Source: Malacoraja senta (Eukaryota). Taken from it: a DNA stretch of 64,000 bases. Location: assembly GCA_038087875.1 (NCBI GenBank), contig CM075984.1, forward strand, positions 9,672,001 through 9,736,000. Direction: 5' to 3'. Below are positions 3,020 through 63,800 of this stretch, one piece after another (position 1 is the stretch's first letter; each line of letters opens with the position of its first letter). Both the position numbers and the translations under genes were made by a program. The notes below the pieces were generated by a model. The model saw only the letters and a list, made by a program, of their open reading frames with translations, searched no databases and was not told the DNA's origin.

Positions 3020-3540
3020 CTTAAGAAGTCACACTGCAGCTTTATAATACTTTGGATAGGCCGCATTTGAAGTAATGTGTGTGGTTCATGATTCCCTATT
3101 GCAGGATGTGGCGGCTTTCGAGAGGGCGTAGAAGAGGTTTGGCATAATGCTGCCTCAATTAGTGAGTAGTAGTAATAAGGAGAGATTGGACAAATTTGTT
3201 TCTCCAGAGCAATGGAGGCCGAGGGAAATATAACATTATGAGATGCATACATTGGGTAGACCGTCAGAATCCTTCTCCTAGGGTGGAAATGTCAAAGACT
3301 AGAGAGCATAGCTTTAATGCGAGAGGGAAACTTTAAGGGAGATATGCTGGGCAAGTATTGTTTTAAGCAGAGAGTGGCAGTAGAATCATAGGTAGACATA
3401 AAATGCTGGAGGAACTCAGCGGGTGAGGCAGCATCTCTGGAGAGCAGGGATGGGCGATATTTCGGGTCAAGACCCTTCTTCAGACTGATGGAATCATGAT
3501 AGGAGCATTTAATATGCTTTTAAATAGGTACATGGAGACA
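3020..3540 (+). mobile_element. Degenerate CR1 LINE 3' fragment with a Penelope pLTR insert (about 3392-3490)
   Basis: Decayed RPHLEYCVQFW/LYSLE-type CR1 nucleotide motifs. Confidence 0.6.
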
Positions 3541-4539
3541 ATTAAAGGCCTATTAAAATGTTTCAGACGAAAGAAATACAAAAGGCTCCGAATGTTCCAA
3601 AACATATTATATTTTAGGGTAAAAATGCAGCAATGTATACAATTATGAAAAACACAATTATATAAATGAAGATAATAAAAGAAAATGCAGATGCTGGAAT
3701 AAGATCAAAATGGAAATCATGCAGGGACAAAGATGAAAGTTCTGAGACCTAAAATGTTAACTTTTTCTCTTTTTACAGATGCTGCCTGAATTGCCTGAGT
3801 TTTTATAGAACATAGAACAGTACAGCACAGGAACAGGCCATTTGGCCCACAATGTCTGTGTGAACAATTATGCCAAGACCAGCATTTGCTGGTGCACGAT
3901 TACATGAACTGTTTTAGTATTTCTAAGCCTAACAAGGTTACATTTACATTCACCCAGGCTGAACACAATCAACATAATTGGAATTCCAATTTCAATCCTG
4001 ATCAGGAATTTGAGATGGAATATTTAGTTGCTCTAAAGTAAATAAAAATTATCTTGCAAAAAATCACCAAGAAATTAGGGGTCAGGAAAAGGATGTCACC
4101 TGTATTATTTGAAAAGCACCCCCCGCTACAACCATAATACACCACTGGCACTATATTGGTCAACAATTCTATCGGTTGTACATGGATAGGACAGGTTTGG
4201 GGGGAGATGGACCAAACGCAGGCTGTGGGACTAGTGTAGCTGGGACACATTGGCCGTTGTGGGCAAGTTGGGCTGAAGGGCCTGTTTCAAACTGTATCAC
4301 TCTATAACTCTATTTCTATGACTCAATTATTTTAACAATCCATCCTCTCAAGGTTCAAAACAAATAGTGACTCAAGTGACATGCTTAGAGTATTGATTCA
4401 AGGGTGGAAGTGTTTTTAGTCACAATTATTATACTAGTTATTCCCTCACATTTATATCAAAAAGACTTCTAACTACCAAGAATATTTTGGAATGAGAAAG
4501 AAGGTGTGGTGGAAACAACTGGAAAAATATATTTCTTAC

Positions 4540-12984: not shown

Positions 12985-13730
12985 TGGGCAAGCCGGCAGC
13001 CCTGTCAGCAGCGTGTTAGTTTTTTTCTACTTTTTTTTGTTTTTTTTAGTGTGTCTTAATGTGTGTTTTTAATGTCTCTCTGTGTGTCTTGTGCGGGGGA
13101 GTGAGGGGGAAACCGCTTTGGTCGCCTCCTCCACGGAGAGGCGACTGTTTCCATGTCGCCTCCCCCGTGGCCTAACATCGAGGATTGGGTGGCATTTCCT
13201 GGAGACGCGCCTGGGCCTTCAGCCGCGGGCGCAGCGTGGACTCTCGTCGCGGAGTGGGCGAGCCCTCGCCAGGGCTCGCCGGAGGGGAGCGCTCCGTTTC
13301 TCTGGCCCGCGGCAGCCGGCAGCCTGAAGTCGCGGTCTGCGGAGCTCCAGCTGGCGTGGCATCCACAGCCTGGGATCCCTTGTGAGGGACCTGGGAGGAG
13401 AAGAGCTCCGACCGCCGGCCCACGGCCAACTTCTACCGCGGGCCCGGCGGCGACTTACCATCAGAAGCGGGGTCCCTCGCCGGGGATCCCTGGAGGGGAG
13501 CCTCGACCGCCGGCCCTGCGGTCTGCGGTGCTTCTGGCTGCGGCGCGACGGGGACTGTAAATCTTCGACCGCCGGCTTGCGGTCTACACCAACCTGAAGC
13601 CACGGTCTCCGGTGGGGGAGGCACCGTTTTAGGACTTACCTTGACTTTCACTCATCTGGATGCCCGCAGCGATGGCTGCGGAGGGTTGAGGTCCCGACCA
13701 CGGGGGAAAATGGAGGAGGACTGGCCAAAT
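12985..13730 (+). mobile_element. GC-rich dispersed repeat (same family group as 9245-10007)
   Basis: Shared head (T-rich stretch, gggggaaac, cctaacatcg). The overlapping ORFs are GC-content artefacts. Confidence 0.55.
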
Positions 13731-14864
13731 TTATTTGCACTGCATTTTTACTTCAACCCAAACCCCCCAAACAATCATTTGCACTGCCTTTTTACTTCAA
13801 CCCAAACCCCTCCCCACACAAACATTTGCACTGCCTTTTTACTTCAACCCAAACCCCCCAAGCAACCATTTACACTGCCTTTTTACTTCAACCCAAACCC
13901 CCCAAACAACCATTTGCACTGCCTTTTTACTTCAACCCAAAAACCCCCCAAACAACCAATTGCAGTGCCTTTTTACTTCAAACCAACCCCCCCCCCAAAC
14001 AACCATTTGCACTGCCTTTTTACTTCAACCCAAAACCCCCCCAAACAACCATTTGCACTGCCTTTTTACTTCAACCCAAACCCCCCCAAACAACCATTTG
14101 CACTGCCTTTTTACTTCAACCCAAACCCCCCCAAACAACCATTTGCACTGCCTTTTTACTTCAACCCCAAAAAAACCAAACAACCATTTGCACTGCCTTT
14201 TTACTTCAACCCCCCCCCCCAAAAAAAAACAACCATTTGCACTGCCTTTTTACTTCAACCCAAAACCCCCCCAAACAACCATTTGCACTGCATTTTTACT
14301 TCAACCCAAACCCCCCAAACAATCATTTGCACTGCCTTTTTACTTCAACCCAAACCCCCCAAGCAACCATTTGCACTGCCTTTTTACTTCAACCCAAACC
14401 CCCCCAAACAACCATTTGCACTGCCTTTTTACTTCAACCCAAAAAAAACCCAAACAACCATTTGCAGTGCCTTTTTACTTCAAACCAACCATATTTTCAT
14501 TTTCAAACCACATTAAGGGCACTCACAGTTGAGGAGACGTGTGTTCAGTGTTATTCAGAGCTCAGAGAGACGTGAACCTCTCGCTTGCTCCATCTTGCAG
14601 AGACTGAGTGAGGCACACCACTTCCGGGTTTTATAGTCCCTCCTCCCTCCCACCAGCAGGGGCAGCAGAGAGAATGGCAACATTTTTAGAAACATTAATA
14701 TATCTCTGATTTTTCATCGATGGGAAAAATCCTCCAGTCCTGGCAGGCGGAGGGGGGCTCTGAGCGAGGTGGCCAAAAATGACGGCCGTAGGTGGCCGTG
14801 TTCTCTCGGAAATCACAGCACAGCGAGCCAAAAGCGGTCAAGATCAGACTTTTAGTAATATAGA
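13731..14864 (-). mobile_element. Non-autonomous Helitron-like element carrying a minisatellite
   Basis: Minus-strand terminus A|TCTATATTACTAAAAGTCTG at 14864, followed by ~370 bp unique body and then the tandem array. 3' end not visible. Confidence 0.6.
13732..14490. repeat. ~39-bp minisatellite, about 19 copies (AAACAACCATTTGCACTGCCTTTTTACTTCAACCCAAACCCCCC)
   Basis: Directly visible. It explains the three repetitive ORFs at 13641-14575. Confidence 0.95.
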
Positions 14865-15840: not shown

Positions 15841-15989
15841 TTCCTTCTCTCCAGAAATGCTGTCGGTCCCGCTGAGTTACTCCAGTTTTTTGTGTCTATC
15901 TTTGGTTTAAACCAGCATCTGCAGATCCTTCCTACACAGTTATTTTTTAATTGTTCCTTCCAAAGTGAATCTCACTTTGAATGGTCTTA

Positions 15990-16894: not shown

Positions 16895-18667
16895 GTTATT
16901 GTCATGTGTCCCTGATAGGACAATGAAATTCTTGCTTTGCTTCAGCACAAAAGAACATAGAAGGCATTGACTACAAAACAGATCAGTGTGTCCATATACC
17001 ATTATATAAATATATACACACATGAATAAATAAACTGATGAAGTGCAAATAACACATAATGGGCTATTAATGTTCAGAGTTTTGTCCGAGCCAAGTTTAA
17101 TAGCCTGATGGCTGTGGGGAAGTAGCTATTCCTGAACCTGGTCGTAGCAGTCTTCAGGCTCCTGTACCTTCTACCTGAAGGTAGCAGGGAGATGAGTGTG
17201 TGGCCAGGATGGTGTGGGTCCTTGATGATGCTGCCAGCCTTTTTGAGGCAGCGACTGATAGATCCCCTCGATGGAAGGAAGGTCAGAGCCGATGATGGAC
17301 TGGGCAGTGTTTACTACTTTTTGTAGTCTTTTCCTCTCCAGGGCGCTCAAGTTGCCGAACTAAGCCACGATGCAACCGGTCAGCATGCTCTCTACTGTGC
17401 ACTCGTAGAAGTTAGAGAGAGTCCTCCTTGACAAACCGACTCTCCGTAATCTTCTCAGGAAGTAGAGGCGCTGATGTGCTTTCTTAATAATGGCATCAGT
17501 GTTCCCGGACCAGGAAAGATCTTCAGAGATGTGCACGCCCAGGAATTTGAAGCTCTTGACATTTTCAACCATCGACCCGTTGATATAAATGGGACAGTGG
17601 GTCCCCATCCTACTCCTTCCAAAGTCCACAATCAGTTCCTTGGTTTTGCTGGTGTTGAGGGCCAGGTTATTGTGCTGGCACCATATGGACAGTTGCTCGA
17701 TCTCTCTTCTATACTCAGACTCATCCCCATCAGTGATACGTCCCACAACAGTGGTGTCATCAGCGAACTTGATGGAGTTCGCACTATGACCGGCTACGCA
17801 GTCATGAGTATAGAGTGAGTACAGCATGGGGCTGAGCACGCAGCCTTGAGGTGCTCCCGTGCTGATTGTTATCGAGTCTGACACATTTCCACCAATCCGA
17901 ACAGACTGTGGTCTGTGAATGAGGAAGTCGAAGATCCAATTGCAGAGGGATGTGCAGAGACCCAGTTCTGCGAGTTTGGTAACCAGCTTGGAGGGGATGA
18001 TTGTATTAAATGCTGAGCTGTAATCAATGAATAACAGCCTGACATATGAGTTTTTGTTGTCCAAGTGGTCCAGGGTGGAGTGGAGGGCCAGCGAGATCGC
18101 ATCCACCGTTGATCTGTTGTGGCGGTAAGCGAACTGCAGTGGGTCCAGGTTTTTGTCGAGGTAGGAGTTGATTTGCGCCATGATCAACCTCTCAAAGTAC
18201 TTCATCACCACAGGCGTTAGTGCCACAGGTCGATAGTCATTGAGGCACGTCACCTTACTCTTCTTGGGCACTGGTATAATTGATGCCCTTTTGAAGCAGG
18301 TGGGAACCTCAGACCTCAGAAGTGAGAGGTTGAAAATGTCCGTAAAAACTCCAGCCAGTTGGTTTTTAGAACACGACCAGGTATACCATCAGGTCCAGGC
18401 ACTTTTCGAGGGTTCACCCCTCTGAAGGATTTCCTGACGTCGGCCTCTGAGACTGAGACTGAAATACCATCACAGCGAATGGGGGCTCGGGAAGGCACAT
18501 CGGTGTTCTCCCTATCAAAGCGTGCGTAAAACGCATTGAGCTCATCAGGAAGTGATGTTTCGCCGACATTCGAGCTGCCTCCTGATTTCGCCTTGTAGGA
18601 GGTGATTATATTCAGGCCCCGCCACAGCTGCTGAACATCTGTCTCTTCCTCCAGTTTGGAGCAGACG
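16895..18667 (-). mobile_element. Rex1/Babar-type LINE, 5'-truncated RT
   Basis: ORF 17360-18271 [43 protein letters not shown]; upstream frameshifted segment [11 protein letters not shown]. Confidence 0.92.
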
Positions 18668-19408
18668 TTTACAGCGCTTACAGCATCAGAGACCCGGGTT
18701 CAATCCCAACTATGGGTAACCACGTGGGTTTTTTCCGAGATCTTCAGTTTCCTCCTACACTCCAAAGATGTACAGGTTTGTACGTTAATTGGCTTGGTAT
18801 AAATTATCCCATGTATGTGTAGGATAGTGTTAATGTGCGGGGATCGCTGGTCCGTGCGGACTCGGTGGACCGAAGGGCCTGTTTCCACGCTGTATCTCTA
18901 AACTCAACTCAACTAAACTATTCTGCCACCACTTCAGAAGCAGGAATTTGCCAATCTCAGCAGTGAACTGAAGTACACAGATTTTACACGTATGCAAGCT
19001 GAGAGGCTGAGCTTCACGTCATCATCAACGTATCTACTGAAGTATATGGGGCAGTCTAGCAGAGACCCTCTGGCAGAGCCGCCTCTCAGAGGATGTGCGT
19101 TACACTCAACAATTGCAAAACAAAGAATACATAAGATAAGAAATGTGAGCACAAGAGACCAATCGGCCCCTCAAGACTGCTCTGCCATCCAATAAGAAAA
19201 TGTGTGATCCAAACTTCTCATCAATACCATTTTCTCTGCACTTCACTGTGTATGTGACGAATAAATCTGACTATTGACTATTCTCCTGACCTCCCCATCC
19301 CCCTTAATTTCCCCCCTGCCCCTGTGTACAAATCTGGCCTCTGACAAGTCCCACTGTGTGGTTGACTTGTAATTGGCCTCAAAATAACCTAGTGATTCTC
19401 TCTGTTGA

Positions 19409-19804
19409 NNNNNNNNNNNNNNNNNNNNNNNNNNNNNNNNNNNNNNNNNNNNNNNNNNNNNNNNNNNNNNNNNNNNNNNNNNNNNNNNNNNNNNNNNNNN
19501 NNNNNNNNNNNNNNNNNNNNNNNNNNNNNNNNNNNNNNNNNNNNNNNNNNNNNNNNNNNNNNNNNNNNNNNNNNNNNNNNNNNNNNNNNNNNNNNNNNNN
19601 NNNNNNNNNNNNNNNNNNNNNNNNNNNNNNNNNNNNNNNNNNNNNNNNNNNNNNNNNNNNNNNNNNNNNNNNNNNNNNNNNNNNNNNNNNNNNNNNNNNN
19701 NNNNNNNNNNNNNNNNNNNNNNNNNNNNNNNNNNNNNNNNNNNNNNNNNNNNNNNNNNNNNNNNNNNNNNNNNNNNNNNNNNNNNNNNNNNNNNNNNNNN
19801 NNNN
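19409..19804. other. Assembly gap (396 N)
   Basis: Run of N. Confidence 1.
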
Positions 19805-21423
19805 TGCTCCGGTTTGCGAGGTTTTTCTATTTGCGCAAAAGCGGTACGCGATAGCATTGCGATTTTTGTGCCCCCTTACTCACCATTCTCCTGTGCTGCG
19901 AGTGCAACAAGTTTCGTTCCGATCGATGGTATATTGTAATAGTTATCGAGGTTTAAAAAATCGTAAACATTGCACTTGTGCAGATTGCTGTGAGTTGCCG
20001 CCACGCAGATTGCTCTCCTCTCCTGTCACTCAGGAAGGGGCGTCGCCGGGAACATCGCCGCACTGATTGGCCACGTCCGTTGTCAATCGGCTGGAGGTCG
20101 CCATGGTGAAGGAGTACATGGTGGGGAGGGTGGTGCCGCGGGCCGAGCCCGAGGATTGGGACTGGGACTGGGACTGGGCCTGGGCTAGAGCCGTCGACCG
20201 AGCCCCGGGACTGGAGTCAAGGATGAGCCCGGGGACTGGGCGTGGGCTGGAGCCGTCGACCGAGCCCGGGGACTGGAGCCAAGGATGAGCCCGGGGACTG
20301 GGCCTGGGCTGGAGCCGTGGGCTGAGCCTGGGGACTGGGCCTGGGCTGGAACCAAGGACGAGCCTGGGGCTGGGGTCAGGGACGAGCCCGTAGATTGTCG
20401 GGGCCTGGACTGGACCGCAGGCGGTGGCCGAGCTGAGGGCTGGAGTCGTGCCCAAGCCCGGGGCCTGGTCAAGGTGTACCAGCACCTCGGGGGCCGCCCG
20501 GCCGCCGCCATCCTGCAGCACAGCCTTCGCTTCCTGCTCTGTGGGCAATTCTGGCTCAGCCGTCCACTGCCCTCACCCCGTCCCCGGCACAGAGAGCCCG
20601 GCTCCGTCGAGGCCCAGGTCTGCGAGCGCTTCGGGCGCCTACAGGCAGGGCCGGGCTGAGTACGAGAACCAGGCCGAGTTCCAGGCCCTGGTGCTGCTCT
20701 ATGACCTAGCTAGGTGCTGGATGGGGGTGAGGGAAGGAGGATGAGAGAAATGGGGAGGAGGAAGATGGGGTGGGAGAGGGATATGGGGTGGTAGAGGGAT
20801 ATGGGGGTGGGGTTGGGGGGCGGGCAGCGCCGAGCCCCACTGTCTACCCGCTGGTGAGGGACACCGCGGGTCCCGGGACAGGCAGCGCCTCAGCGGCTCC
20901 TGCCTGCGGGCGCGGACACCGGGAGGGGCCCTAACGCACCGTAGCGTTACACGGAGAGAGGGAACGCTGCAGCCCGGCCCACAGCACTGGGTGGGGGGGA
21001 GAGAAGACGGAGGGAGGGGGGAGAGAGTGATGAGGGAGGGAGCGGGGAGAGACTGATGAGGGAGGGAGGTGGTGAGAGGGATAAGGAGGGGAGGGGCGAG
21101 GGATGAGGGAGGGAGAGGGGAGAGAGGAATGAGGGAGGGAGGGAGGGAGGGGGGAAAGAGGGAGGGAGTGGGGTAGATGGGTAGTGGAGTGCAGGGAGAG
21201 GGGTAGATAGGCAAGGTGGGATTGAGGGGGAAGTAGAGGAAGAGGGACAGGGAGGGGTGGATTTGATGGGAGGGGGATAGGCATGAGTGGAAGGATATTG
21301 CATTGGGGGAATGGATTGCGTTGGGGAAACGGGTGAGTGGTGGAATATTGCGTTGGGGAACGGGTTGCGTTGGGGACCAGGCCTCCCGTGTGCCAGGGAC
21401 CCAACGGGTCCCACCTAGTCTAG
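19805..21423 (+). mobile_element. Helitron-like element (3' terminus present, 5' end hidden in the gap)
   Basis: Hairpin GGGACCC-AAC-GGGTCCC (21396-21412), then CTAG (21420-21423) and a flanking T. Subterminal TTGCGTTGGGGAA repeats. 19805-20030 resembles the body of the other Helitron-like elements here. Confidence 0.6.
20088..20713 (+). pseudogene. SAC3D1-like (SAC3/GANP domain) gene fragment, internally deleted and frameshifted
   Basis: Collinear motifs RLEV..VKEY, QHLGGRPAAAILQHSLRFLL, VEAQVCERFG and YENQAEFQALVLLYDL match the recalled SAC3D1 motifs HRLEV..AVKEY, LQAQVQEGFGSL and RQPAFQGLFLLYNL. The intervening conserved blocks are missing, the frames are broken, and a GACTGG-based minisatellite lies at 20155-20410. 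Confidence 0.7.
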
Positions 21424-21839
21424 TAAGTAACAAATTCCAAATTAATTAAGCATAAGTACTGATACATTGGACTGGACCGAGCTCTAATGTGGGCTGCATT
21501 TCAGTGAGAATCCATTGATGCCTGTCCTCTGATATAAATAATATTCAGTTTAATGTCTGGACAGTCTTACAAAAAGTATTTTTACTGAAATCTTTATGGA
21601 TTGCTTAATGTTACTAAACTAAATGCAGCAAAGAATGCAGAAAGAAAGAACATATGGTTATATTCCATCGTGCTGATGGATTACAGCAGTTTTGGAATGT
21701 ATTAGCTAGAGAATTGTGCAAATATTTCTACCGCTATCTATTTGAACCATAACATACCAGTGTAATTATGATTATATTTTTGCCAGTTACCAATTGGACC
21801 AAAGCAGAATTTCAACCTCAAACATACCTATTATCCTTA

Positions 21840-22169
21840 TTAACTTTGATTGCACATGCCCAAGTGACAGGCTTCACAGAAGTCACTTTCATGAGGTGTA
21901 GTCTTCCGATGCATCCGAACTCTTCCTTCTTCGACCAGATTGGGAACACGATAGCAGTTTTGAGGATTTTTAAAATAAGTCTGTCAAGCACTTGGTCCAT
22001 TTGTTCGGAATTAACCTGTGGTTTGTGCAGAGTGGGGTTATTGCATTCTCTGCATTGCTGCCGGAGGAGGCGAAGCAAAACTAATCCACTTTTCTTTCTC
22101 AGGCGGTAATGAAACACCATACTGGCACGGGCTGAAGACCACGAATTTGAACAGCGAGGACAGGTAAAT
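21840..22169 (-). CDS. RTP-family (receptor-transporting protein, zf-3CxxC) last coding exon, with a 1-nt frame break
   Basis: cttccaacag|A TTT ACC TGT: FTCPRCSNSWSSARASMVFHYRL..LLRQQCREC..LILKILK. After a -1 shift at about 21958-21973 it continues NCYRVPNLVEEGRVRMHRKTTPHESDFCEACHLGMCNQS*, with TAA at 21840-42. PH..FCEAC..G.C is the RTP signature. Confidence 0.88.
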
Positions 22170-23244
22170 CTGTTGGAAGTAAGGGCAGGGTAGTTAGTGT
22201 TGATGAAGAACATGTCATTTCATGCTTGAAATTTCCTCTCTCTGCTTCTGAGTGCATTTAGAACAGCTTTGTAAGGGCTCACATCAGTGCCACGTACACC
22301 ACAGCAGCAAGATGAAATCTGATGCCAGAAATTTGAAATCAAAGCAGAACATGTCAGAAACACTCGGCAGATCAGGCAGCATCTGTGAAGAGAAAAGCTG
22401 TTTTCAAACTGATAACATTTCATCAGTGATGCGTATTTCCAGCATTTTCTGCATATGCATGAATTTACACATGAACATGTGTAACCGATAAACATATACA
22501 TAACCGTAACTCATAAACATGTGAAAAAGGTAAGTGGATATGCCAGGCAATAATATTAATCATAGACCAACAACACAGTACTAGTTCTGCTATAACTGTA
22601 CCAGAAGCTGCTTATTCTTTAGAAGTCTCTGCTTGGTTCTGGAACCCACACCTGAGGGAGGATATATGGAGGTTAGTGGAAGTGCACATTGAGCAGCTTG
22701 AGTGGCTTTTTTTTACACTTCATCTGTTCGATAACGAGCCTTTTCTCACAGGATAGAATGATAAACTGAATGTGCAAGCACATGAATTTCAAGGGAATCA
22801 AACACAACATGAATGACCCTGACATGTCATGGAAATGAAAGACTATCACGTCCCAAAACAAAACTTAAACAGAAAGCTAAAGGATGTCATCAGAAAGAAG
22901 GGACATTCATTTAAAGGCTACCAACACAATTAGAGCTGGCACTGATCTTAAGGTGGCAAACAGCTGAGAGGAAGATACACTGATTGTCCTTGACAAGAAC
23001 TGGCCCCCAAGGGTGTCACGGTGGCGCAATGGTAGAGTTGCTGGCTTATAGCGCTGGAGACCCGGGTTCGATTCCGACTATGGGTGTTGTCTATATGGAG
23101 TTTGTACGTTCTCCCCATGACCGCGCGGCGTTTCTCTGAGATCTTTGCTTTCCTCCCACACTCCAAAGGCATACAGGTACATAGGTTAATTGTCCCTAGT
23201 GTGTTTACCTGTTTCCACACTGTATCAAACTATGACTCTATAAG

Positions 23245-24725
23245 ATATAGGAGCCGATTTAAGCCGTTCGAGTCATCATGTCTGCAATGCCATGCAATCA
23301 TGGCTGATCTATTTTTCCCTCGTCCCCTTTTTTCCCCATTCCCTTGCTCCCATTCGTCCCAATCTTTGATACCTTATTAATCATGAAGCTATCAACCTCC
23401 GCTTTAAAATACCCAATGTCAGCCTCCACAGCCACCTGTGGCAATTAATTCCACAGATTCACCACCCTCTGGGTGAAGAAATTCCTCATCTCCATTCTAA
23501 AGGTACATTCTTTTATTCTGGGGCTGTGTCCCCAGACTCTCCCACTACTGGAAACATCCTCTCCACATCCACTTTGTCTAGGCCTTACATTATTCAGTAG
23601 GTTTCAATGAGATCCCCACTCTCCCTCTCATCCTTCTGAACTCCAGTGTGTACAGACTAGAGCCATCAAATGCTCCTCACACGATAACCCAATAATTCCT
23701 AGAATCATTTTCACAAACCTCCTCTGGACCTTTTCTAATGCCAGCATATCCTTCCTCAGAAGTGGGGCTCATAACTGTTCACAATATTATAAAGCCTCAG
23801 CAGCACATCTTTGTTTTTATATTCTTGTCCTAATGAAAGGAATGCTAACATTGCTTTTGACTGATTTGACCTGGAAATTGCCCTTTTGAGATTCCTGATG
23901 CAGTACTCCCAGGTCCCTTTGCACCTTTGATTTCTGAATCCTTTTCCCATTTAGAAAGTAGTCTATGCGTTATTCCTACTATTATATTATTGGCCAGCTT
24001 AGCTTTATATTTCATCTTTTTTTTAACCTTGTTCTTTTTTTAGTTGCCTTCTCTTAGTTTTTAAAAGCTATCTAATCCTCTAGCTTCCTGGTCATCTTTA
24101 CCATGTTATATGCCTTCTTTTTTACTTGTATACTATCTTTCCTTTGTCAGCCAAGGTCTCCTCATTCTGCCCTTAGTATGTTTCTTTCTCTTAAGGATGA
24201 AAAGATCTGCGTCTTCCAAATGACTCCCAGAAACTCCTGCCATTGTTACTCACCCGTCTTTGCTGCTCGGGTCGCCTTCCAATCAACTTTAGACAACTCC
24301 TCCTTCATGCATCTGTAGTTACATTTACTCAATAGTAATACCGATACATCTGATTTCATTTCTCCTTCTCAAATGGCAGGTTAATTTTGATCATATATGA
24401 TCATAGCCTCTTCTGGATTCCTTGCCTTTAAACTCCCTAGTCAAATCTGATTAATTACACAACACAGAATTGCCTTTTCCCTAGTGGGCTCGACCATGAG
24501 TTTCTCTAAAAAAAAGGCATCTCGTAGGCATTCTGAAAATTCCTTCTCTTTGGGATCCAGTGCAGGTAGATTTTTCCAGTCTACCTGCATATTGAAAACC
24601 CCCATGACCACTGTAACATTGCCTTTCTTACATGCCTTTTCTATCTCCTGATGTAATTTGGACCCAATATCCTGGCTAGTATTCAGAGGCTCGAATATAA
24701 CTCCCATCATGGTCTTTTGGTCCTT
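23245..24725 (-). mobile_element. Degenerate CR1 LINE (endonuclease remnant to 3' end, internally deleted)
   Basis: ORF 24441-24767 VVMGVFN..DW..EFSECLRDAF..EPTREKAIL; RT-tail motifs nearer 23.3-23.9 kb. Confidence 0.75.
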
Positions 24726-30815: not shown

Positions 30816-31917
30816 TATTCTTAAGCAAATTGAATGATAACTTTTATTTCCATATGTTAATATTTCTCTCATCTTTACGACTGAAAACAAACAAAATAAG
30901 ATTTTCCAGGTTTGCCTTCCAAGGTGTTTCATCGGTTAAATCAATAGGATCAAGAAGGATCCTGACCCAAGACGTCGCCAAACCATGTTCTCTGCATATG
31001 CTGCCTGACACGCTGAGTTACTCCACAACTTTGTATCTTCTTTTGAAAACTAGCATCTGTAGTTCGTTTGTGTCTTATTTAAAATAGCTGGTCATGCTGA
31101 AAGCCAAGTGGATAGGCAGTTAAAATAGCCAATGCTACTAATCACCAGGCGAGGGCGTGGGTCGCACATGCTGCTTTCAAATGGAATTGGCACATTTGGA
31201 TTTTAAAAAATAAGTTCACTGTACATTTTATTACAGCAATGAAAGGGTTGGCTGGATCCCAAAGTGATGCTTCACTTTCTTTTGAAGGTAGACCTTGCAG
31301 AGAAGGGCTTAAAACCAGAACGGGAGCAGGGTTTCGGGTATTCAAGCATGGCTCCTCCTGGCTTAGCTGTTTCTCAGTTTCATTATCTTATCTATCCTTT
31401 AATACATTTATCCAGTCTGTCAGCCTCAGCTTTTGGATATTTCAGCAGCACAACATTAGTTCTGGATAAGGAGTTATTGCCACTTCAGTCCGCCATTTGT
31501 GGTAATATTGCTTCAAGATATTTCTAAAAAAGTAACCCTTTGCTGGCATTGGCAAATGTCAGTTTATAAGCCCTGGAATTTGAGAGAGTTGCCATCTAGT
31601 CCAATGCCACCTCTCTCCTAGTTGGCAGTCGTGATAGGATTCATAGCCAAGACTCCTCTTTTGGATCATTGGTTTCACCCTTATTTTGTGAACAAAATGG
31701 CTGCAGCATGTAGCATTCATGGGTTACTGGGTGTCCTGCAAAAATGTTGCTAAGTAGGTGAGAAACACGTTTGAATGATTGCAAAGCTGATCAATGCAGA
31801 ATTTGTAGTTTATGAGGGCGCGCTTACCGACAGATCCTAGATCTGATACAACAGCGTGCGTGCGTGTTGCATGTGCAGTTGACGCCGCGCACGAATGATT
31901 CACCGCTATATTTTGCC

Positions 31918-34290
31918 CGTCTCTGTAACCCCCCTCCCATCCAGTCCCCCTCCCCTCCCCCTCAATGTTCCGTCCCTCTCAATGTCCCTCCCCCTCAATG
32001 TCCCCTCCCCTCCATGTCCCCTCTCCCTCAATGTTCACTCCCCATCTCCCTCAATGTCCAGTCCCGTCAACTCCCCGCCCCCCTCTCACCCTGTCCCCTC
32101 CCATACCCTCCTCCTCTCCCTTAATATCCTCCCTCCTTCACTCTCCTCCCCCACCGCACCCTCACGGTGTTGTCCCATCTCCCTCTCTCCTCCCCTCCCC
32201 TCCCCATCGCCTCTCCCTCCCCCTCTCCCTCTCCCTTCTCACCCATCTCCCTCCCCCTCCATGTCCCCTCTCCCCACCCCTCGCATTCCCTCCCGTCCCA
32301 TCGAATCAGTCCTGGGATACAGAGTCACACAGCGTGGAAAGAGGCCCTTCGAACCAATGTTCCCACAACGACCAATGTCTCCTCCCCTCCTCTCAACATC
32401 CCCTCACCTTCAATTTCCTCTCCCCCTCAATGTCTGCTCCCCTCCCCTTCCCCTCAATGTCCCCTCCCCTCAATGTCCCTTCCCCTCCCCTCCCCATCAG
32501 CGTCCCCTTCCCCTCAATGTCCCCTCTTCCTCATTGACCCCTCTCCCTCCCCCTCAATGTCCCCTCCTCTCCCCCTCAATCGGGTCCCACATAAGAGATT
32601 AGCATATAAACTTAAAGCAAATGGTATTGCGGGTTCAGTATTGATGTGGATAGAGACTGGCTGGCAGACAGGAAGCAAAGAGTAGGAGTAAATGGGTCCT
32701 TTTTCCAGAATGGCAGGCAGTGACTAGTGGGTACCGCAAGGCTCAGTGCTGGGACCCCAGCTATTTACAATATATATTAATGAGCTGGATGAGGAATTGA
32801 ATGCAACATCTCCAAGTTTGCAGATGACACAAAGCTGGGGGCAGTGTTAGCTGTGAGGAGAATGCTAGGAGGCTGCAAGGTGGCTTGGATAGGTTGGGTG
32901 AGTGGGCAAAGGCATGGCAGATGCAGTATAATGTGGATAAATGTGAGGTTATCCACTTTGGTGGCAAAAACAGGAAAGTAGACTATTATCTGAATGGTGG
33001 CCGATTAGGAAAAGGGGAGATGCAATGAGACCTGGGTGTCATGGTACACCAGTCATTGAAAGTAGGAATGCAGGTGCAGCAGGCAGTGAAGAAAGCCAAT
33101 GGTATGTTAGCATTCATAGCAAAAGGATTTGAGTATAAGAGCAGGGAGGTTCTACTGCAGTTGTACAGGGTCTTGGTGAGACCACACCTGGATATGCATA
33201 CAGTTTTGATTTCCTAATCTGAGGAAAGACATTCTTGCCATAGAGGAGTACAGAGAAGGTTCACCAGACTGATTCCTGGGATGGAAGGACTTTCATATGA
33301 AGAAAGACTGGATAGACTCGGCTTGTACACGTTGGAATTCAGAAGACTGAGGGGGGATCTTATAGAAATTCTTAAGGGTTGGACAGGCTAGATGCAGGAA
33401 GATTATTCCCGATGTTGGGGAAGTCCAGAACTAGGGTCACAGTTTAAGGATAAGAGGGAAGACTTTTAGGACCGAGATGAGGAAATCATTTTTTTTACAC
33501 AGAGAGTGGTGAATCTGTGGAATTCTCTGCCACAGAAGGTAGTTGAGGCCAGTTCATTGGCTATATTTAAGAGGGAGTTAGATGTGGCCCTTGTGGCTAA
33601 AGGGATCAGGGGGTATGGAGAGAAGGCAGGGATGGGATACTGAGTTGGATGATCAGCCATGATCATATCAAATGGCGGTGCAGGCTCGAAGGGCCGAATG
33701 GCCTACTCCTGCACCTATTTTCTATGTTTCTATGTTTCAATGTCCCATCCCCCTCAATGTTCCCTCTCCCTCAATGTCCCCTCCCCCTCCCCCTCAATGT
33801 GCCCTCTCCCTCAATGTCCCCTCCCCTCAATGTCCCTCCCCCTCAATGTCACTCCCCCTACCCTCCCGACCCCCTCTCTCCCATCTCTGTAACCCCCTCC
33901 CCCTCCCGTCCCCTCTCCCTCAATGTCCCGTTATCTCTCCCTCCCATACCGTCCCCTCCCGTTCCCTCCTCCTCTCCTCAATATACCCCCCTCCTCCACT
34001 CTCCTCTCTACCTACGCACTGCGCCCCTCACAGCCCCATCCCATCTCCCTCCCCTCGCGTCCCCTCCACTGTCCTTCCCTCCCCTCTCCCTTAATATCCT
34101 CCACTCTCCTCCCCACCATGCCCCTCAGGGTGCTGTCCCATCATCCCCTCCCCTTTCCATCCCCCTCCCATCCCTCTTTCTCCCCTCCCCCTCCCCATCC
34201 CCACTCCCTCCCCCTCTCCTTCCTCACCCCTCTCCCCCACCCTTAGCATTCCCTCCCGTCTCATCAACTCAGTCCTGGGATACAGTCACA
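31918..34290. repeat. C-rich (CCCTCAATGT-based) low-complexity tandem region, duplicated and split by a CR1
   Basis: 31918-32340 and 33882-34290 are similar blocks, both ending in tcagtcctgggatacag. Confidence 0.8.
32582..33737 (+). mobile_element. CR1 LINE RT 3' fragment
   Basis: PQGSVLGP..FADDT..RPHL motifs with frameshifts; (TTCTATGT)n tail. Confidence 0.9.
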
Positions 34291-34712
34291 CCGGCCCAAC
34301 GTTCCCACACCTGCCCCGTCTACACTAGTCCTTATTGTCCCTTACATGCCACGTCCTACACTCACCTTTTGTCCCTTATTTGGGAGTGAGGAAGTTGGAA
34401 ACCCTCTATGTTGGCGATATTGTCTTGTGCATTAATAATGTTAGAAAAATGCCAGCTCATTAAATTGAATTGCACCCGGGAAGTCTTCAATTCAATTTCC
34501 CAAATTGTCAGGTCTTTATGTTGAAATGCATTTTTAATGTGATTTTCAATTAATGTATATTGACTCATTTTCAAGGCCTTTATGTTTTCTAAGCAGCCAA
34601 ATTACATTCCTGCAGAAAGATTTCTCATAAAACAGAGTAGGTAATGTCTGTAAAAGTCACACATTGGCAAAAGAACTATAATTGAAAATTACAGAAGATA
34701 AAATGTCCTTAC

Positions 34713-58149: not shown

Positions 58150-58545
58150 CCTCGGCAAGGCCAGCAGCATAATCAAGGACGAGTTGCACCCTGGCCACTC
58201 CCTCTTCTCCCCTATCCCATCGGGCAAAAGGTATAGAACTGTGAAAATGCACGCCTCCAGATTCAGGGACAGTTTCTTCCCAGCTGTTATCAGGCAACTG
58301 AACCATCCTACCACAACCAGAGAACAGCCCTGAACTATTATCTATCTCATTGGCGACCCTCGGACTATCTTTGATTGGACTTTACTGGCTTTATCTTGCA
58401 CTAAACATTATTCCCTTATCATGTATCTTTACGCTGTGACTGGCTTGACTGTAATCATGTATTGTCATTCCACTGACTGGTTAGCACACAACAAAAGCTT
58501 TTTACTGTACATGTGACAATAAAGTAAACGGAACTGAACTGAACT
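58150..58545 (+). mobile_element. Rex/Babar-type 3' end
   Basis: HPGHSLF..PSGKRYR..RFRDSFFP coding remnant; GACAATAAA (GAACT)n tail. A sister tail lies at 56420-56690. Confidence 0.75.
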
Positions 58546-58928
58546 GGCTGATATATTCGAGAACCATTGGTCTAGGATGATCTACAGCCCAGAGTTCTGA
58601 CAGAGGTGGCTTTGTATACAGTGGGTGCTCTTGTTATCATCTTACTTTAGAGATACAGTGTGGAAAAAGGCCCTTCGGCCCGCCAAGTCCATGCCATCCT
58701 ACGATCACCCGAACACTGGTTCAAAGGTCAAAGGTCAAAGGTATTTTATTTGTCACATTCACATACACCCAGGTGTAGTGAAGTGAAATGCTTCTTGCCA
58801 TTTTTGCAGCACACAAAAAAAAGAGAATACAGACATAACACCAATAAGAGTCTTAAACACAAAGAACATCCCCCCACAATGGCTCCCACCATGAGGGAAG
58901 GCACAAAGTCCAGTCCCCAACCCCAGTT

Positions 58929-59128
58929 NNNNNNNNNNNNNNNNNNNNNNNNNNNNNNNNNNNNNNNNNNNNNNNNNNNNNNNNNNNNNNNNNNNNNNNN
59001 NNNNNNNNNNNNNNNNNNNNNNNNNNNNNNNNNNNNNNNNNNNNNNNNNNNNNNNNNNNNNNNNNNNNNNNNNNNNNNNNNNNNNNNNNNNNNNNNNNNN
59101 NNNNNNNNNNNNNNNNNNNNNNNNNNNN
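58929..59128. other. Assembly gap (200 N)
   Basis: Run of N. Confidence 1.
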
Positions 59129-59649
59129 CTTTTGATGAACTCCAATGTGGGTGGTTGGCAATTCACGCAATAAGTGTAATGCAGCAGTGCAGATAGAGAA
59201 TAGGCACAGTTTGAGAATATGTCGGGCCATTTAGGACTAGATGAGAAAAACATTCTTCATTCAGAGGGACGTGACCCTTTGGAATTCTCTACCCAGGAAG
59301 GCTGCAGAGGCTGATTGATAGATTTCTGGAGATTATGAGAATCAAACGGTACAATGATAGGACTGGACATGGTACTGAGATAGAAGTTCAGTCATGACCT
59401 GCCTCTATTTGTGTTTTGTGCTGCAGAAGAGCAGCGTAACTCAGTTCCAGTGACTTGGGTTCCATTTTGCTCTCTGTGGGGAACCTTCCACGAGCACATC
59501 CTCCCTGTGACTGTGTGGGTTCCTCACACTCGATCAGGTTTTCAACCGCCTGCTGTTGAGTGGTTGTTGTCACTGTAAATTAGCCTGTGTGTGAGGGGAG
59601 GTAAAAACATTGAAGAATGGGGTGGGTGGGAGCAAAGAGTGTTCACAAG

Positions 59650-60850: not shown

Positions 60851-63800
60851 GCTTTGGAGGTGTGTTAATGTGTATACTGCAGAGCATGGATTAAATAGAG
60901 GAATAGGAGTGATAGTTTTGCCCTGTGATCTGGCATAAACTCGATGGGCTGAATAGCCTCCTTCTATGTGGTGAGAAAATATGAGAATGATAATGCACAC
61001 AGCCCACTCCTGTTCCTACCTATTATGTTTGCACATTATGGTTGGCCTTTTCGCCTCATTTTCAGTTTGACTGTCTGTTTGGGACTGTGCTGACTCGGTT
61101 CCATTGTTAACCTGTGTGTCATAGCCAGAAATTAAAGGTTCAATGGTATTTTATTGCCACATGTACCTAGCTACGGAAAAATTACGTACAATTTTTATGT
61201 AGAGTTCTGTAACAATTCATTATACACAATCATACTTAGCACAAGATAGTTACAATTACATAGTACACAAGAGTCGCCACTTTTTAAGCACTGTCTTGTA
61301 CACTTCAAGTTCAGAGATGTGAGTCTTAACTTGTCTTAACTTGGCCATGAAGGCCTGTTGTCCTGTAGGCGGCGTTGGGTTGGTGTTGCAGGGGACGGCC
61401 TGGGCCGGGCGATACTACCGGTGACTTTCACCACTGCTCCACCGCTCCCTGCCGCTGCAGGCTATGTCTGATCCACGCACTCAGCGATTTGGAGCGGCGC
61501 CCGATCTAAACGGAACTGAACTGAACTGGCTGATATATTCGAGAACCATTGGTCTAGGATGATCTACAGCCCAGAGTTCTGACAGAGGTGGCTTTGTATA
61601 CAGTGGGTGCTCTTGTTATCATCTTACTTTAGAGATACAGTGTGGAAAAAGGCCCTTCGGCCCGCCAAGTCCATGCCATCCAACGATCACCCGAACACTG
61701 GTTCAAAGGTCAAAGGTCAAAGGTATTTTATTTGTCACATTCACATACACCCAGGTGTAGTGAAGTGAAATGCTTCTTGCCATTTTTGCAGCACACAAAA
61801 AAAAGAGAATACAGACATAACACCAATAAGAGTCTTAAACACAAAAAACATCCCCCCCACAATGGCTCCCACCATGAGGGAAGGCACAAAGTCCAGTCCC
61901 CAACCCCAGTTCACCCATAGTCGGGCCCATTGAGGCCTCCACAGTTGCCTCTACGGAGGCCCGATGTTCCAGGCCATTCTCGCCGGGTGATGTTCCTCCG
62001 GCGTCGGGAGAGTCCTCCCAGCGGCCTGGGAATCCTGGAACGGCCGCTTCTGCACTGGAGGCCGCGGTTTCCGAAGCCAACAAGGCCGCGCCGGTTGGAG
62101 CTCCACAACTGGCGATCTCATCTAGAGATCCCAGGCTCCCGGTGTAAAGTTCAGCGCCACCGCCCGCAGCTGGTCGCTCCACAGTCCCGCAGCTCCGCGA
62201 TGTTTTCCCCAGCGATCCTCAGCTCACCGGAGCTCCAGCGCGGCGACCCGGGCAAGGCATCGCCCGCTCCGCGATAGCGCTCCAGCGCTGTGCCGCCGCC
62301 AAAGCCGAGGTTCTGGGTGGTCCCCGACAGGAAACGCCGCTCCAGGCCCGCTGGTAGGCCGCGAGGACGGGTCGAAGCTGCAGCCTGGAGAAAAGCTGCC
62401 TCTCCGACCAGGTAGGGACCCTGAAAGGTAGTTTCCCCCTTCCCCACCCCCCACCCCCCACATAAAAAAGTCTAGACCTCCAAACAAAACACTTAACTAA
62501 CTAAAATAAAAAATAAAAAGATGAAGAGACAGACAGCTGCTGGCTGGGCAGCCATGCACAGGACAGCGCCCCCTAGAGCGCTGTCCTGCACACTAGGGAC
62601 AATTCTATAGAAGCCAATTAGCCAATAAGCTTACATGTCTCTGGAATGTGGGTAGAAACTGGAGCACCTGGAGAAAACCCACACAGTCACAGGGAGAACG
62701 TACAAACTCCGCACAGACAGCACCCATAATCAGGATGGAACCTAGATCTCTGGTGCTGTAAGGCAGCAACTCGACCTCTGCACCACTGTGCCGCATCTTT
62801 CATGTTTCTATAGAGTCTGGAATTGATCCTGTGTGTTGGAGAGTGGCAATTGTGACCCGGCCATTTAACAAAAGAGGGGGAGAGAAAGTAGGGAACAACT
62901 GACCTGGTGGTTAACATCAGTGGTAACAATCAATGCTAGAATCTATGATGAAAAGAATAATTAGATTGACTAGATACATCATGTTAAATCTACTGGATTT
63001 CTTTGAGGATATGACCGGTTGATCAGATAAGAGAGAAACAGCGACTGGGTTGTACTGTATTTTCAGAAGGCTTTTGATGAACTCCAATGTGGGTGGTTGG
63101 CAATTCACGCAATAAGTGTAATGCAGCAGTGCAGATAGAGAATAGGCACAGTTTGAGAATATGTCGGGCCATTTAGGACTAGATGAGAAAAACATTCTTC
63201 ATTCAGAGGGACGTGACCCTTTGGAATTCTCTACCCAGGAAGGCTGCAGAGGCTGATTGATAGATTTCTGGAGATTATGAGAATCAAACGGTACAATGAT
63301 AGGACTGGACATGGTACTGAGATAGAAGTTCAGTCATGACCTGCCTCTATTTGTGTTTTGTGCTGCAGAAGAGCAGCGTAACTCAGTTCCAGTGACTTGG
63401 GTTCCATTTTGCTCTCTGTGGGGAACCTTCCACGAGCACATCCTCCCTGTGACTGTGTGGGTTCCTCACACTCGATCAGGTTTTCAACCGCCTGCTGTTG
63501 AGTGGTTGTTGTCACTGTAAATTAGCCTGTGTGTGAGGGGAGGTAAAAACATTGAAGAATGGGGTGGGTGGGAGCAAAGAGTGTTCACAAGTTCACAAGT
63601 TATAGGAGTAGAATTACGCCATTCGGCCCATCAAGTCTACTCAGCCATTCAATCATGGCTGATCTCTGCCGCCTAATCCCATTTTCCTGCCTTCTCGCCA
63701 TAACCCCTGACTCCCGTATTAAGCAAGAATCTATCTTTCTCTGCCTTAAGAATGTCCGTTGACTTGGCCCCCACAGCCCTCTGTGGCAATGAGTTCCACA

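What the first reader, a model, noticed from the sequence alone, without database searches (positions are those of the whole stretch)
19805..21423. Helitron-like element apparently carrying a captured SAC3D1 (SAC3/GANP) gene fragment
Seen: a Helitron-type 3' end (perfect 7-bp GC hairpin, then CTAG|T at 21420-24), and upstream of it a GC-rich segment whose broken frames spell collinear SAC3D1-like motifs (RLEV..VKEY; AAAILQHSLRFLL; EAQVCERFG; NQAEFQALVLLYDL). The segment ends near a possible donor and is followed by purine-rich intron-like DNA. Known: Helitrons capture host exons at the DNA level in maize, bats and insects. Inference: this is rolling-circle gene capture in a cartilaginous fish, which I do not recall being described. 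It places a CpG-island-like block about 400 bp from the RTP stop codon.
Basis: partly seen in the sequence, partly recalled or inferred. Interest (0 to 1): 0.75.

Follow-up and report, generated by a model that had tools for sequence, protein, structure and literature searches.

The report
Helitron copy carrying SAC3D1 fragment
This is one old, dead copy of an abundant rolling-circle transposon (Helitron) of skates that carries a stolen, broken piece of the host gene SAC3D1. It is a well-known kind of event, seen here in a little-studied lineage, and this scan has already met it elsewhere in the same genome.

Summary
Both parts of the observation hold.

**SAC3D1 cargo.** Window 20091-20709 derives from exon 1 of skate SAC3D1. 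A phmmer search gave E 2.5e-18 to a Rhinoraja longicauda SAC3D1-like protein, and tblastn gave E down to 1.9e-34. The DNA match (84-87%) runs across the exon 1/intron 1 junction, so this is a DNA-level copy and not a retrocopy. It is dead: it lacks about 25 codons at the 5' end, has four internal deletions and a mutated splice donor, and exon 2 is nowhere in the 64 kb.

**Element end.** The block ends at 21423 with a 7-bp hairpin, 11 nt and CTAG, followed by T. That boundary is real. Rhinoraja longicauda has an empty site that joins the two flanks and reads A|T. Amblyraja radiata has the same element at the same place.

**Family.** The backbone parts flanking the cargo are high-copy in four genomes. 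Dozens of distinct contigs carry the cargo. Relatives of the 5' backbone lie at other Rhinoraja loci.

**Not shown.** The 5' terminus lies in the N run and was not read. An autonomous RepHel partner was not tested.

**Verdict.** Helitron gene capture is supported (0.85). It is a new member of a known kind. I found no paper describing it in skates, but this scan has already reported this family and cargo on other DNA of the same genome.

The parts
19409..19804 (.). N run (396). By comparison with relatives it should hide about 19 nt of host flank, the 5' terminus of this unit, and probably one or more upstream tandem units. It was not read or filled.
   Evidence: the N run. The Rhinoraja empty site has about 21 nt between the flank matches. 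In the A. radiata ortholog the family 5' motif lies 13 nt left of the base matching 19805 (22 nt as a gapless offset), and at least 5.5 kb of tandem array lies upstream.
19805..20044 (+). Helitron 5' backbone, the family-shared part. It is CpG-rich.
   Evidence: 89.6% identical to the A. radiata ortholog. About 70% identical to two non-orthologous copies in Rhinoraja L002, with the core CCTTACTCACCATT shared. Summed contig depth is about 186,000 against about 20 for unique flank. CpG o/e of 19805-20090 is 1.27.
20045..20090 (+). Short GC-rich joint with an ATTGG (CCAAT-box-like) motif. Its origin is unknown.
   Evidence: No match in the SAC3D1 parent loci. It lies inside the 20045-20545 stretch that the A. 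radiata ortholog lacks.
20091..20709 (+). Cargo derived from SAC3D1 exon 1, from about codon 26 to the last exon base. It is broken: deletions of 9, 81, 43 and 11 nt relative to the parent, and at least two frame changes. It contains a diverged 62-nt tandem repeat (20170-20338) at the place of the parent's 54-nt coding repeat.
   Evidence: phmmer E 2.5e-18 to P0001. P0001 and P0002 carry PF03399. tblastn E 1e-27 to 1.9e-34. DNA 86.6% to Rhinoraja and 83.7% to A. radiata exon 1. Alignment A3. TRF.
20710..20830 (+). Start of SAC3D1 intron 1, carried along with the exon. The donor is mutated GT to CT at 20710-20711. A G-rich minisatellite follows, as in the parent intron.
   Evidence: The DNA match runs 9 nt (Rhinoraja L001) and 43 nt (A. 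radiata L007) past the exon end. The parent intron starts with the same kind of G-rich repeat. Beyond about 20755 homology cannot be told apart from low complexity.
20831..20990 (+). Non-repetitive GC-rich segment of unknown origin, either further cargo or backbone.
   Evidence: Conserved in the A. radiata ortholog. Absent from the SAC3D1 loci of both relatives. Depth is about 70-100 times the unique level.
20991..21278 (+). G-rich minisatellite (periods 22-26 nt).
   Evidence: TRF. Direct-repeat family D10. Lowest depth of the block.
21297..21376 (+). 17-nt tandem repeat (ATTGCGTTGGGGAATGG, 4.8 copies) in the 3' subterminal region.
   Evidence: TRF. Highest depth of the block, about 754,000, with many repeat-number joints.
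21396..21412 (+). Subterminal hairpin with a 7-bp perfect stem and a 3-nt loop.
   Evidence: The 5' arm is decayed in the A. radiata ortholog.
21413..21423 (+). 3' terminal 11 nt, ACCTAGTCTAG, ending in CTAG. Host T follows at 21424.
   Evidence: The Rhinoraja empty site resumes exactly at 21424. The same end is present in A. radiata. The same-species unique contig starts at 21401, and contigs of other species start at 21419 or reach 21385.
21840..22172 (-). Neighbour, not part of the element: the last exon of an RTP3-like (zf-3CxxC) gene, convergent with the cargo. The exon start (about 22172) was read by eye from the sequence and not tested. As assembled it has a 1-nt frame slip near 21957.
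   Evidence: All four runs' contigs have an extra T after 21957.

Best explanation
Window 19805-21423, plus a short hidden stretch to its left, is one decayed unit of a non-autonomous Helitron family of skates.

Shown:
- It is an insertion with a precise 3' boundary (hairpin, 11 nt, CTAG|T) into a site that reads A|T where it is empty.
- Its inside holds a DNA-level copy of host SAC3D1, from about codon 26 of exon 1 through the splice donor into intron 1.
- The flanking backbone parts are very high-copy. The cargo is present in dozens of sequence variants in each of four genomes.
- The insertion is shared with Amblyraja radiata and absent from Rhinoraja longicauda.

Inferred, from the established Helitron mechanism (Grabundzija 2016, PMC4778049; I cite it for its abstract only): an ancestral element lying in or next to SAC3D1 was mobilised by a RepHel transposase. 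The 3' stop signal was missed, or a new one was used, so host exon and intron DNA was copied along between the 5' backbone and a 3' end. The chimeric element then spread by rolling-circle ('peel-and-paste') transposition.

This copy is inert. The cargo has four deletions, frame changes, a dead donor and no exon 2. It has no shown function. It leaves a CpG-island-like block about 400 bp past the 3' end of a convergent RTP3-like gene.
For: SAC3D1 origin:
- phmmer of window 20189-20656 against 1.84 billion proteins gives only two hits. Both are SAC3D1 of batoids (E 2.5e-18 and 2e-7), and both carry PF03399.
- tblastn of eight elasmobranch SAC3D1 proteins hits only 20104-20708 (E to 1.9e-34).

DNA-level copy:
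- 86.6% identity over 269 nt and 83.7% over 307 nt, crossing the exon 1/intron 1 junction of the Rhinoraja and A. radiata genes.

Not the real gene:
- Exon 2 is absent from the 64 kb.
- The intact genes lie on other chromosomes than the RTP3-like locus in both relatives.

Insertion:
- Rhinoraja L003 joins the left flank (up to 19406, 93%) to the right flank (from 21424, 94.6%) and reads ...GTTGAA|TAAATAAC. It does so twice, in a local duplication.
- The A. radiata ortholog (flank 92.8%) has the element with the same end.

Helitron features:
- The hairpin plus CTRR|T motif is unique in the window, with 0.05 expected.
- No terminal inverted repeats.
- Family relatives in Rhinoraja L002 and in the A. 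radiata ortholog show TC-initiated 5' motifs and the same type of 3' end, head to tail.

Copy number:
- Unique flank depth is 20-80. The 5' backbone reaches about 186,000 and the 3' region about 754,000.
- Between 11 and 43 distinct contigs cover cargo position 20627 in each of four organisms.
- A shared deletion variant (20446 joined to 20639) is present in all four.

The scan's earlier notes report the same family and cargo elsewhere in this genome. I treat these as leads only.
Against: - The 5' terminus and the 5' junction of this copy are inside the N run. So 5'-TC, the host A and the absence of a target-site duplication are not seen here.
- In the relatives two candidate 5' ends are possible (TCTAGTATATTA... 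or TCTCATCTTGT...). I could not decide between them with three copies.
- Depth from Logan contigs is a rough, summed measure. It is inflated by microsatellite-like stretches, so copy numbers are orders of magnitude only.
- In A. radiata the unit sits at the end of a tandem array of at least 5.5 kb. Part of the family's abundance may therefore come from tandem duplication and not from transposition, and the indel relative to Rhinoraja may be more than one event.
- The region 20831-20990 is unexplained.
Confidence: 0.85

Rival explanations
1. This is an unprocessed SAC3D1 pseudogene fragment made by ordinary segmental or tandem duplication. It merely lies between two unrelated repeats, and no transposon carried it.
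For: The A. radiata ortholog lies at the end of a tandem array with periods of about 1.8 and 3.6 kb. Depth is very uneven along the block. The 5' end is unseen.
Against: - The whole block is a single clean indel relative to the Rhinoraja empty site, ending exactly at a hairpin-CTAG.
- The cargo exists in dozens of distinct contigs in each of four genomes, with a shared deletion subfamily.
- Upstream array units in A. radiata carry no SAC3D1, so tandem duplication at this locus did not multiply the cargo.
- The 5' backbone and the 3' end type recur together at unrelated Rhinoraja loci.
Confidence: 0.07
2. The carrier is another class of mobile element, such as a TIR 'Pack'-type DNA transposon or LINE-mediated 3' transduction of unspliced RNA, and not a Helitron.
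For: The 5' end is hidden, so TIRs and target-site duplications cannot be fully excluded. Gene-fragment capture is also known for MULE, CACTA and hAT elements in plants (my own knowledge).
Against: - No inverted repeat of the 3' end is found in the visible 5' part or the left flank.
- The 3' end has the Helitron-specific combination of subterminal hairpin, CTRR and host T, and the empty site reads A|T.
- There is no poly-A or LINE tail at either visible end.
- Head-to-tail units with 3' and 5' motifs 13-14 nt apart occur in two species.
Confidence: 0.05
3. This is the real SAC3D1 locus, with exon 1 garbled by poor assembly of GC-rich DNA next to a gap.
For: An N run lies directly upstream. The block is 64-73% GC. 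The same assembly has a 1-nt slip in the neighbouring RTP exon.
Against: - Exon 2 is absent from the 64 kb.
- The first 25 codons and the promoter of the parent are absent.
- The independent A. radiata assembly has the same broken copy at the same place, with the same 11-nt deletion and donor mutation, and also has an intact gene on another chromosome.
- Rhinoraja has nothing at this site.
Confidence: 0.01

Closest known systems
Helibat / HelibatN families of vespertilionid bats, which amplified the promoter and first exon-intron of NUBPL and other genes (Pritham & Feschotte 2007 and Thomas et al. 2014, as cited in PMC5381603; the NUBPL detail is from my own knowledge)
   Same: A non-autonomous vertebrate Helitron with a 3' hairpin and CTAG end. 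It carries a DNA-level copy of the 5' part of a host gene (first exon plus start of the intron) and has multiplied it many times.
   Different: The host lineage is skates (Rajiformes). The cargo is SAC3D1, without its promoter or start codon. The copy sits in or next to a tandem array of units. No chimeric transcript or exaptation is shown here.
Maize gene-fragment-carrying Helitrons (PMC2575219, PMC4528327)
   Same: Capture of exon-intron fragments between conserved termini, with interchangeable cargo within one family.
   Different: Maize elements often carry pieces of several genes and are transcribed into chimeric RNAs. Here one identified fragment plus one unexplained GC-rich segment is present, and transcription was not examined.
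Helraiser mechanism (PMC4778049)
   Same: [quoted passage not shown] This matches the cargo lying between the 5' backbone and the 3' hairpin-CTAG.
   Different: The mechanism is transferred by analogy. Nothing about transposase activity or end recognition was tested for the skate family.
The same Helitron family with SAC3D1 cargo at other loci of this genome (scan notes s1-177993, s1-191403, s1-177980)
   Same: The same cargo (most of exon 1 with its donor and intron 1 sequence) and the same kind of termini, as those notes describe them.
   Different: This locus adds an empty site in R. longicauda, a filled ortholog in A. radiata, and the parent gene structure. Those notes are AI notes that I could not re-examine.

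Membership tests
Helitron (canonical, Helitron1-type) | 3' terminus CTRR | tested here: met
   CTAG at 21420-21423. The boundary is fixed by the Rhinoraja empty site, by the A. radiata ortholog and by the contig starts.
Helitron (canonical, Helitron1-type) | GC-rich hairpin about 10-12 nt upstream of the 3' end | tested here: met
   A 7-bp perfect stem with a 3-nt loop at 21396-21412, 11 nt from the end. The composite motif occurs once in the window, with 0.05 expected.
Helitron (canonical, Helitron1-type) | Insertion between host A and T | tested here: met
   Host T at 21424. The empty site in R. longicauda reads ...GTTGAA|TAAATAAC in two local copies. The host A of the filled site itself is inside the N run.
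Helitron (canonical, Helitron1-type) | 5' terminus TC | tested here: inconclusive
   Relatives (Rhinoraja L002 at 15985 and 18019; the A. radiata ortholog) show 5' motifs that begin with TC under either of two possible readings. The exact terminus is not settled.
Helitron (canonical, Helitron1-type) | No target-site duplication and no terminal inverted repeats | tested here: inconclusive
   No inverted repeat of the 3' end is found in the visible part or the left flank. The 5' junction is unseen, so a target-site duplication cannot be excluded.
Helitron (canonical, Helitron1-type) | Multi-copy family with shared termini and variable inside | tested here: met
   Depth at the two ends is thousands of times that of the unique flank and much lower in the middle. 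Relatives with the same backbone but other cargo occur in Rhinoraja L002.
Helitron (canonical, Helitron1-type) | Autonomous partner encoding Rep/helicase with matching termini in the same genome | not tested
Scan notes s1-175015 and s1-175104 claim one exists. This is unchecked.
Functional SAC3D1 (SAC3/GANP family, PF03399) | Complete SAC3_GANP domain in an open frame across two exons | tested here: not met
   Pfam finds nothing in the stop-free pieces. Four deletions and frame changes are present. Exon 2 is absent. This is a fragment, not a gene.
Processed pseudogene (retrocopy) | Intron-less copy of mRNA with a poly-A tail | tested here: not met
   The copy keeps the exon 1/intron 1 junction and intron sequence. 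There is no poly-A.

The most novel reading that the evidence does not exclude
The family-shared 5' backbone keeps a CpG o/e of 1.27 in an insertion old enough to be shared by two skate genera. This would fit germline hypomethylation. If that is so, this Helitron family would be spreading promoter-like CpG islands, some with captured gene 5' parts, through skate genomes. At this locus the island would point convergently at an RTP3-like gene and could give antisense transcripts or small RNAs against SAC3D1 or the RTP gene.
Probability: 0.07. Interest if true: 0.6.

Novelty: new member of a known kind. Interest (0 to 1): 0.3.

Why it matters
Helitron gene capture is textbook biology in maize and bats, so the mechanism is not new. 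Three things are worth recording.

1. It occurs in cartilaginous fishes. Four full-text searches found no paper that describes Helitron gene capture there.
2. This locus gives a clean natural experiment, with an empty site in one skate genus and a filled, co-decaying ortholog in another. That proves mobility and brackets the age of the insertion.
3. Annotators should know that skate genomes hold many SAC3D1-like exon fragments that can seed false gene models.

For this scan it is a repeat sighting of a family already reported on other windows of the same genome.

Tried and rejected
- **Pfam and PDB phmmer on the three stop-free pieces**: no SAC3 hit, because the pieces are too short and broken. 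This is not evidence against homology, as one search showed.
- **The search for homologous proteins with the 156-aa piece**: nothing. The length filter excludes full-length SAC3D1.
- **Protein atlas on residues 90-156**: only hits of 0.71 or lower to unnamed clusters. Uninformative.
- **Rfam on 17000-24000**: no RNA family. The idea that the block is an rDNA or snRNA spacer unit was dropped.
- **Fold of the 3' end as a whole**: z = -1.05, not exceptional. Only the local hairpin matters.
- **Search for other copies in the window**: none. The G-rich arrays at 31.9-34.3 kb match only as low complexity.
- **Search for TIRs**: none.
- **Left junction in A. radiata**: the window's left flank is not within 5.5 kb upstream there, where a tandem array intervenes. 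The 5' junction could not be examined in that species either.
- **5' terminus from a Rhinoraja copy inserted in a SINE** (read by eye): ambiguous.
- **RNA evidence:** none. The single run search returned runs of unknown kind or guessed DNA, with flat coverage of the unique flank as genomic DNA gives, kept as contigs.

Full report
**What is there.** The stretch 19805-21423 lies directly to the right of a 396-N run (19409-19804). It is 57-73% GC, against about 40% in the flank. A 7-bp perfect hairpin (GGGACCC, loop AAC, GGGTCCC) lies at 21396-21412. It is followed by 11 nt ending in CTAG at 21423, with T at 21424. A composite search for a GC-rich 7-bp hairpin, a CTRR end 9-13 nt further on and a following T finds this site only in the 64 kb, on either strand. 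Markov-1 simulations give 0.05 per window.

**Is the SAC3D1 likeness real?**
- Pfam and PDB phmmer on the three stop-free pieces found nothing. A length-filtered protein search also found nothing.
- An exhaustive phmmer of the 156-aa piece (window 20189-20656) against 1.84 billion representatives returned just two proteins: P0001 (E 2.5e-18) and P0002 (E 2e-7).
- These are 'SAC3 domain-containing protein 1(-like)' of Rhinoraja longicauda and Mobula birostris. Both carry PF03399 SAC3_GANP, at E 4.7e-69 and 3.6e-59.
- tblastn of eight elasmobranch SAC3D1 proteins against the window hits only 20104-20708 (E 1e-27 to 1.9e-34). Nothing matches exon 2 anywhere in the 64 kb.

**It is a DNA-level copy of a gene piece.**
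- The Rhinoraja gene (L001) and the Amblyraja radiata gene (L007) each have two exons. Exon 1 encodes residues 1-284/285 and is followed by an intron that opens with a G-rich minisatellite.
- Window 20463-20720 matches L001 1073-1341 at 86.6%. Window 20463-20755 matches L007 3599-3898 at 83.7%. The matches run 9 and 43 nt past the exon end into intron 1.
- Alignment A3 places the start of homology at window 20091 (the RLEV codons, about codon 26).
- The same alignment shows deletions of 9, 81, 43 and 11 nt relative to the parent genes. These explain the frame changes.
- It also shows the ancestral donor GT changed to CT at 20710-20711.
- The parent's first 25 codons and promoter are absent, and nothing in the parent loci matches 19805-20090 or 21250-21423.
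- In the well-aligned part the cargo is 88-90% identical to the two genes. The genes are 94-95% identical to each other.

**It is an insertion with a precise end.** I fetched RTP3-like loci of relatives through the neighbouring gene.
- *Empty site in R. longicauda (L003).* The window's left flank (18921-19406, 87-93%) and right flank (from exactly 21424, 94.6%) lie about 21 nt apart. The site reads ...GTTGAA|TAAATAAC, that is A|T. This is seen twice, because of a local 288-bp duplication.
- *Filled ortholog in A. radiata (L004).* The flank is 92.8% identical and the element is present at the same place with the same end (...CCCACTTAGTCTAG|TAAATAAC). It shares the 11-nt deletion and the donor mutation. 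It lacks window 20045-20545.
- *Contigs from sequencing runs.* The same-species unique contig starts at 21401. Contigs of two other organisms start at 21419 or carry 21385-21423.
- *Real gene elsewhere.* The intact SAC3D1 genes lie on other chromosomes than the RTP3-like locus in both relatives: CM021394 against CM021378, and CM130190 against CM130175. A mis-assembled real locus is therefore excluded.

**It belongs to an abundant family.** These figures come from Logan contigs of four organisms, laid at 85% likeness or better.
- The unique flank has a flat depth of about 20, 50, 82 and 20.
- The block ranges from about 290 to about 754,000. The peaks are at the 5' backbone (19805-19938, about 186,000) and at the 3' subterminal 17-nt repeat region (21279-21412). 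The cargo and minisatellite parts are much lower.
- At cargo position 20627, 43, 34, 11 and 27 distinct contigs overlap in the four runs. A deletion variant (20446 joined to 20639) is present in all four.
- These depths are summed and rough, so I read them as orders of magnitude only.

Relatives of the 5' backbone lie just downstream of the SAC3D1 gene in Rhinoraja L002, with 5' motifs at 15985 and 18019, the shared core CCTTACTCACCATT, and other cargo. One is preceded 13 nt upstream by a 3' end of the same type (...CACTTGGTCTAG). The A. radiata ortholog shows the same head-to-tail arrangement just to the left of the base matching window 19805. Upstream of that lies a tandem array of at least 5.5 kb, with periods of about 1.8 and 3.6 kb and no SAC3D1.

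The 5' terminus of this unit must therefore lie inside the N run, which probably stands for such an array. I did not fill the N run. I saw letters of the other two species next to the corresponding places, and I use them only to describe those species.

**Classification.**
- *Met here:* the CTRR end, the subterminal hairpin at 11 nt, host T with an A|T empty site, and a multi-copy family with shared ends and variable inside.
- *Inconclusive:* the 5'-TC terminus, which begins with TC in relatives under either of two readings, and the absence of a target-site duplication.
- *Partly met:* the absence of TIRs. No TIR is visible, but the 5' end is unseen.
- *Not tested:* a RepHel partner.

Retrocopy and functional-gene readings fail their defining tests. 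I put Helitron-mediated capture at 0.85. The main rival is an ordinary duplication lying between unrelated repeats (0.07).

**How it most likely arose (inferred).** The explanation follows the Helitron model, in which a 3' hairpin acts in transposition and gene fragments are captured and mobilised (PMC4778049, abstract as listed). In that reading, host DNA next to an ancestral element in SAC3D1 was copied between the 5' backbone and a 3' end. The chimera was then spread by a transposase supplied in trans. Nothing suggests present function. The cargo is broken and convergent with the RTP3-like gene, whose ortholog-supported stop is at 21840-21842.

**CpG content.** The block qualifies numerically as a CpG island (GC 0.64, o/e 0.64). 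The backbone has an o/e of 1.27. That value is unexplained and is the basis of the 'novel case'.

**Novelty.** Four full-text searches and three papers read gave no description of Helitron gene capture in cartilaginous fishes. No listed paper has 'Helitron' together with a skate genus. Earlier notes of this scan already report this family, with SAC3D1, HTRA2 and ALG13 cargo, at other places in the same genome. They agree with my reading but are unchecked AI notes. This finding is therefore a further copy of something the scan has met before. It is a new member of a known kind and of modest interest.

Noticed in passing
window 21941-21974 (RTP3-like last exon, minus strand): The assembly seems to lack one base. 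Contigs of all four runs, including the same-species run, have an extra T after 21957. With it the frame would follow the orthologs (P0013, P0014, P0016) to a stop at 21840-21842 in place of 21818.
   Followed up: partly
L001 700-1020; L007 about 3190-3550 (SAC3D1 exon 1 of skates): Skate SAC3D1 genes carry an in-frame tandem repeat (54 nt in Rhinoraja) inside the SAC3 domain. This gives 444-446 aa, against 309-391 aa in other rays and sharks. Its effect on the protein is unknown.
   Followed up: no
L002 15985-16813, about 17600-18007, 18019-about 18470 (R. longicauda, just 3' of the SAC3D1 gene): Several head-to-tail units of the same Helitron family carry other cargo: promoter-like DNA rich in CCAAT boxes and exon-like pieces ending in GTGAGT. 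They sit directly downstream of the gene that supplied the cargo of the window's copy.
   Followed up: partly
L008 (A. radiata), the 5.5 kb on the side corresponding to the window's N run: A tandem array with periods of about 1.78 and 3.57 kb, C-rich minisatellites and repeated hairpin-CTAG motifs lies upstream of the orthologous unit. The window's left flank is not found within it. Helitron units may be forming satellite-like arrays.
   Followed up: partly
window 19805-20090: CpG o/e is 1.27 (23 CpGs in 286 nt) in an old insertion, and many CpGs are kept in the A. radiata ortholog. This is unusual for a decayed transposon.
   Followed up: no
window 31900-32600 and 33700-34300 (G-rich on the minus strand): Arrays of GGGACATTGAGGG-type repeats resemble the G-rich part of the block and of SAC3D1 intron 1 at 60-68% identity, with a SINE tail inside one of them. 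Whether they are kin or merely similar low-complexity DNA is open.
   Followed up: partly
window 58525-58824 = 61507-61806 and 59129-59428 = 63071-63370: Two pairs of 100% identical 300-nt direct repeats lie around the second N run (58929-59128). They could be a recent duplication or an assembly artefact.
   Followed up: no
window 13700-14500: A 44-47-nt tandem array (about 17 units), C/A-rich, gives long spurious ORFs in three frames.
   Followed up: no
L003 8150-8437 and 6936-7223 (R. longicauda): A 288-bp segment holding the empty site is duplicated at 98.6% identity, together with part of the RTP exon. This is a local tandem duplication of the RTP3-like 3' region in that species.
   Followed up: no
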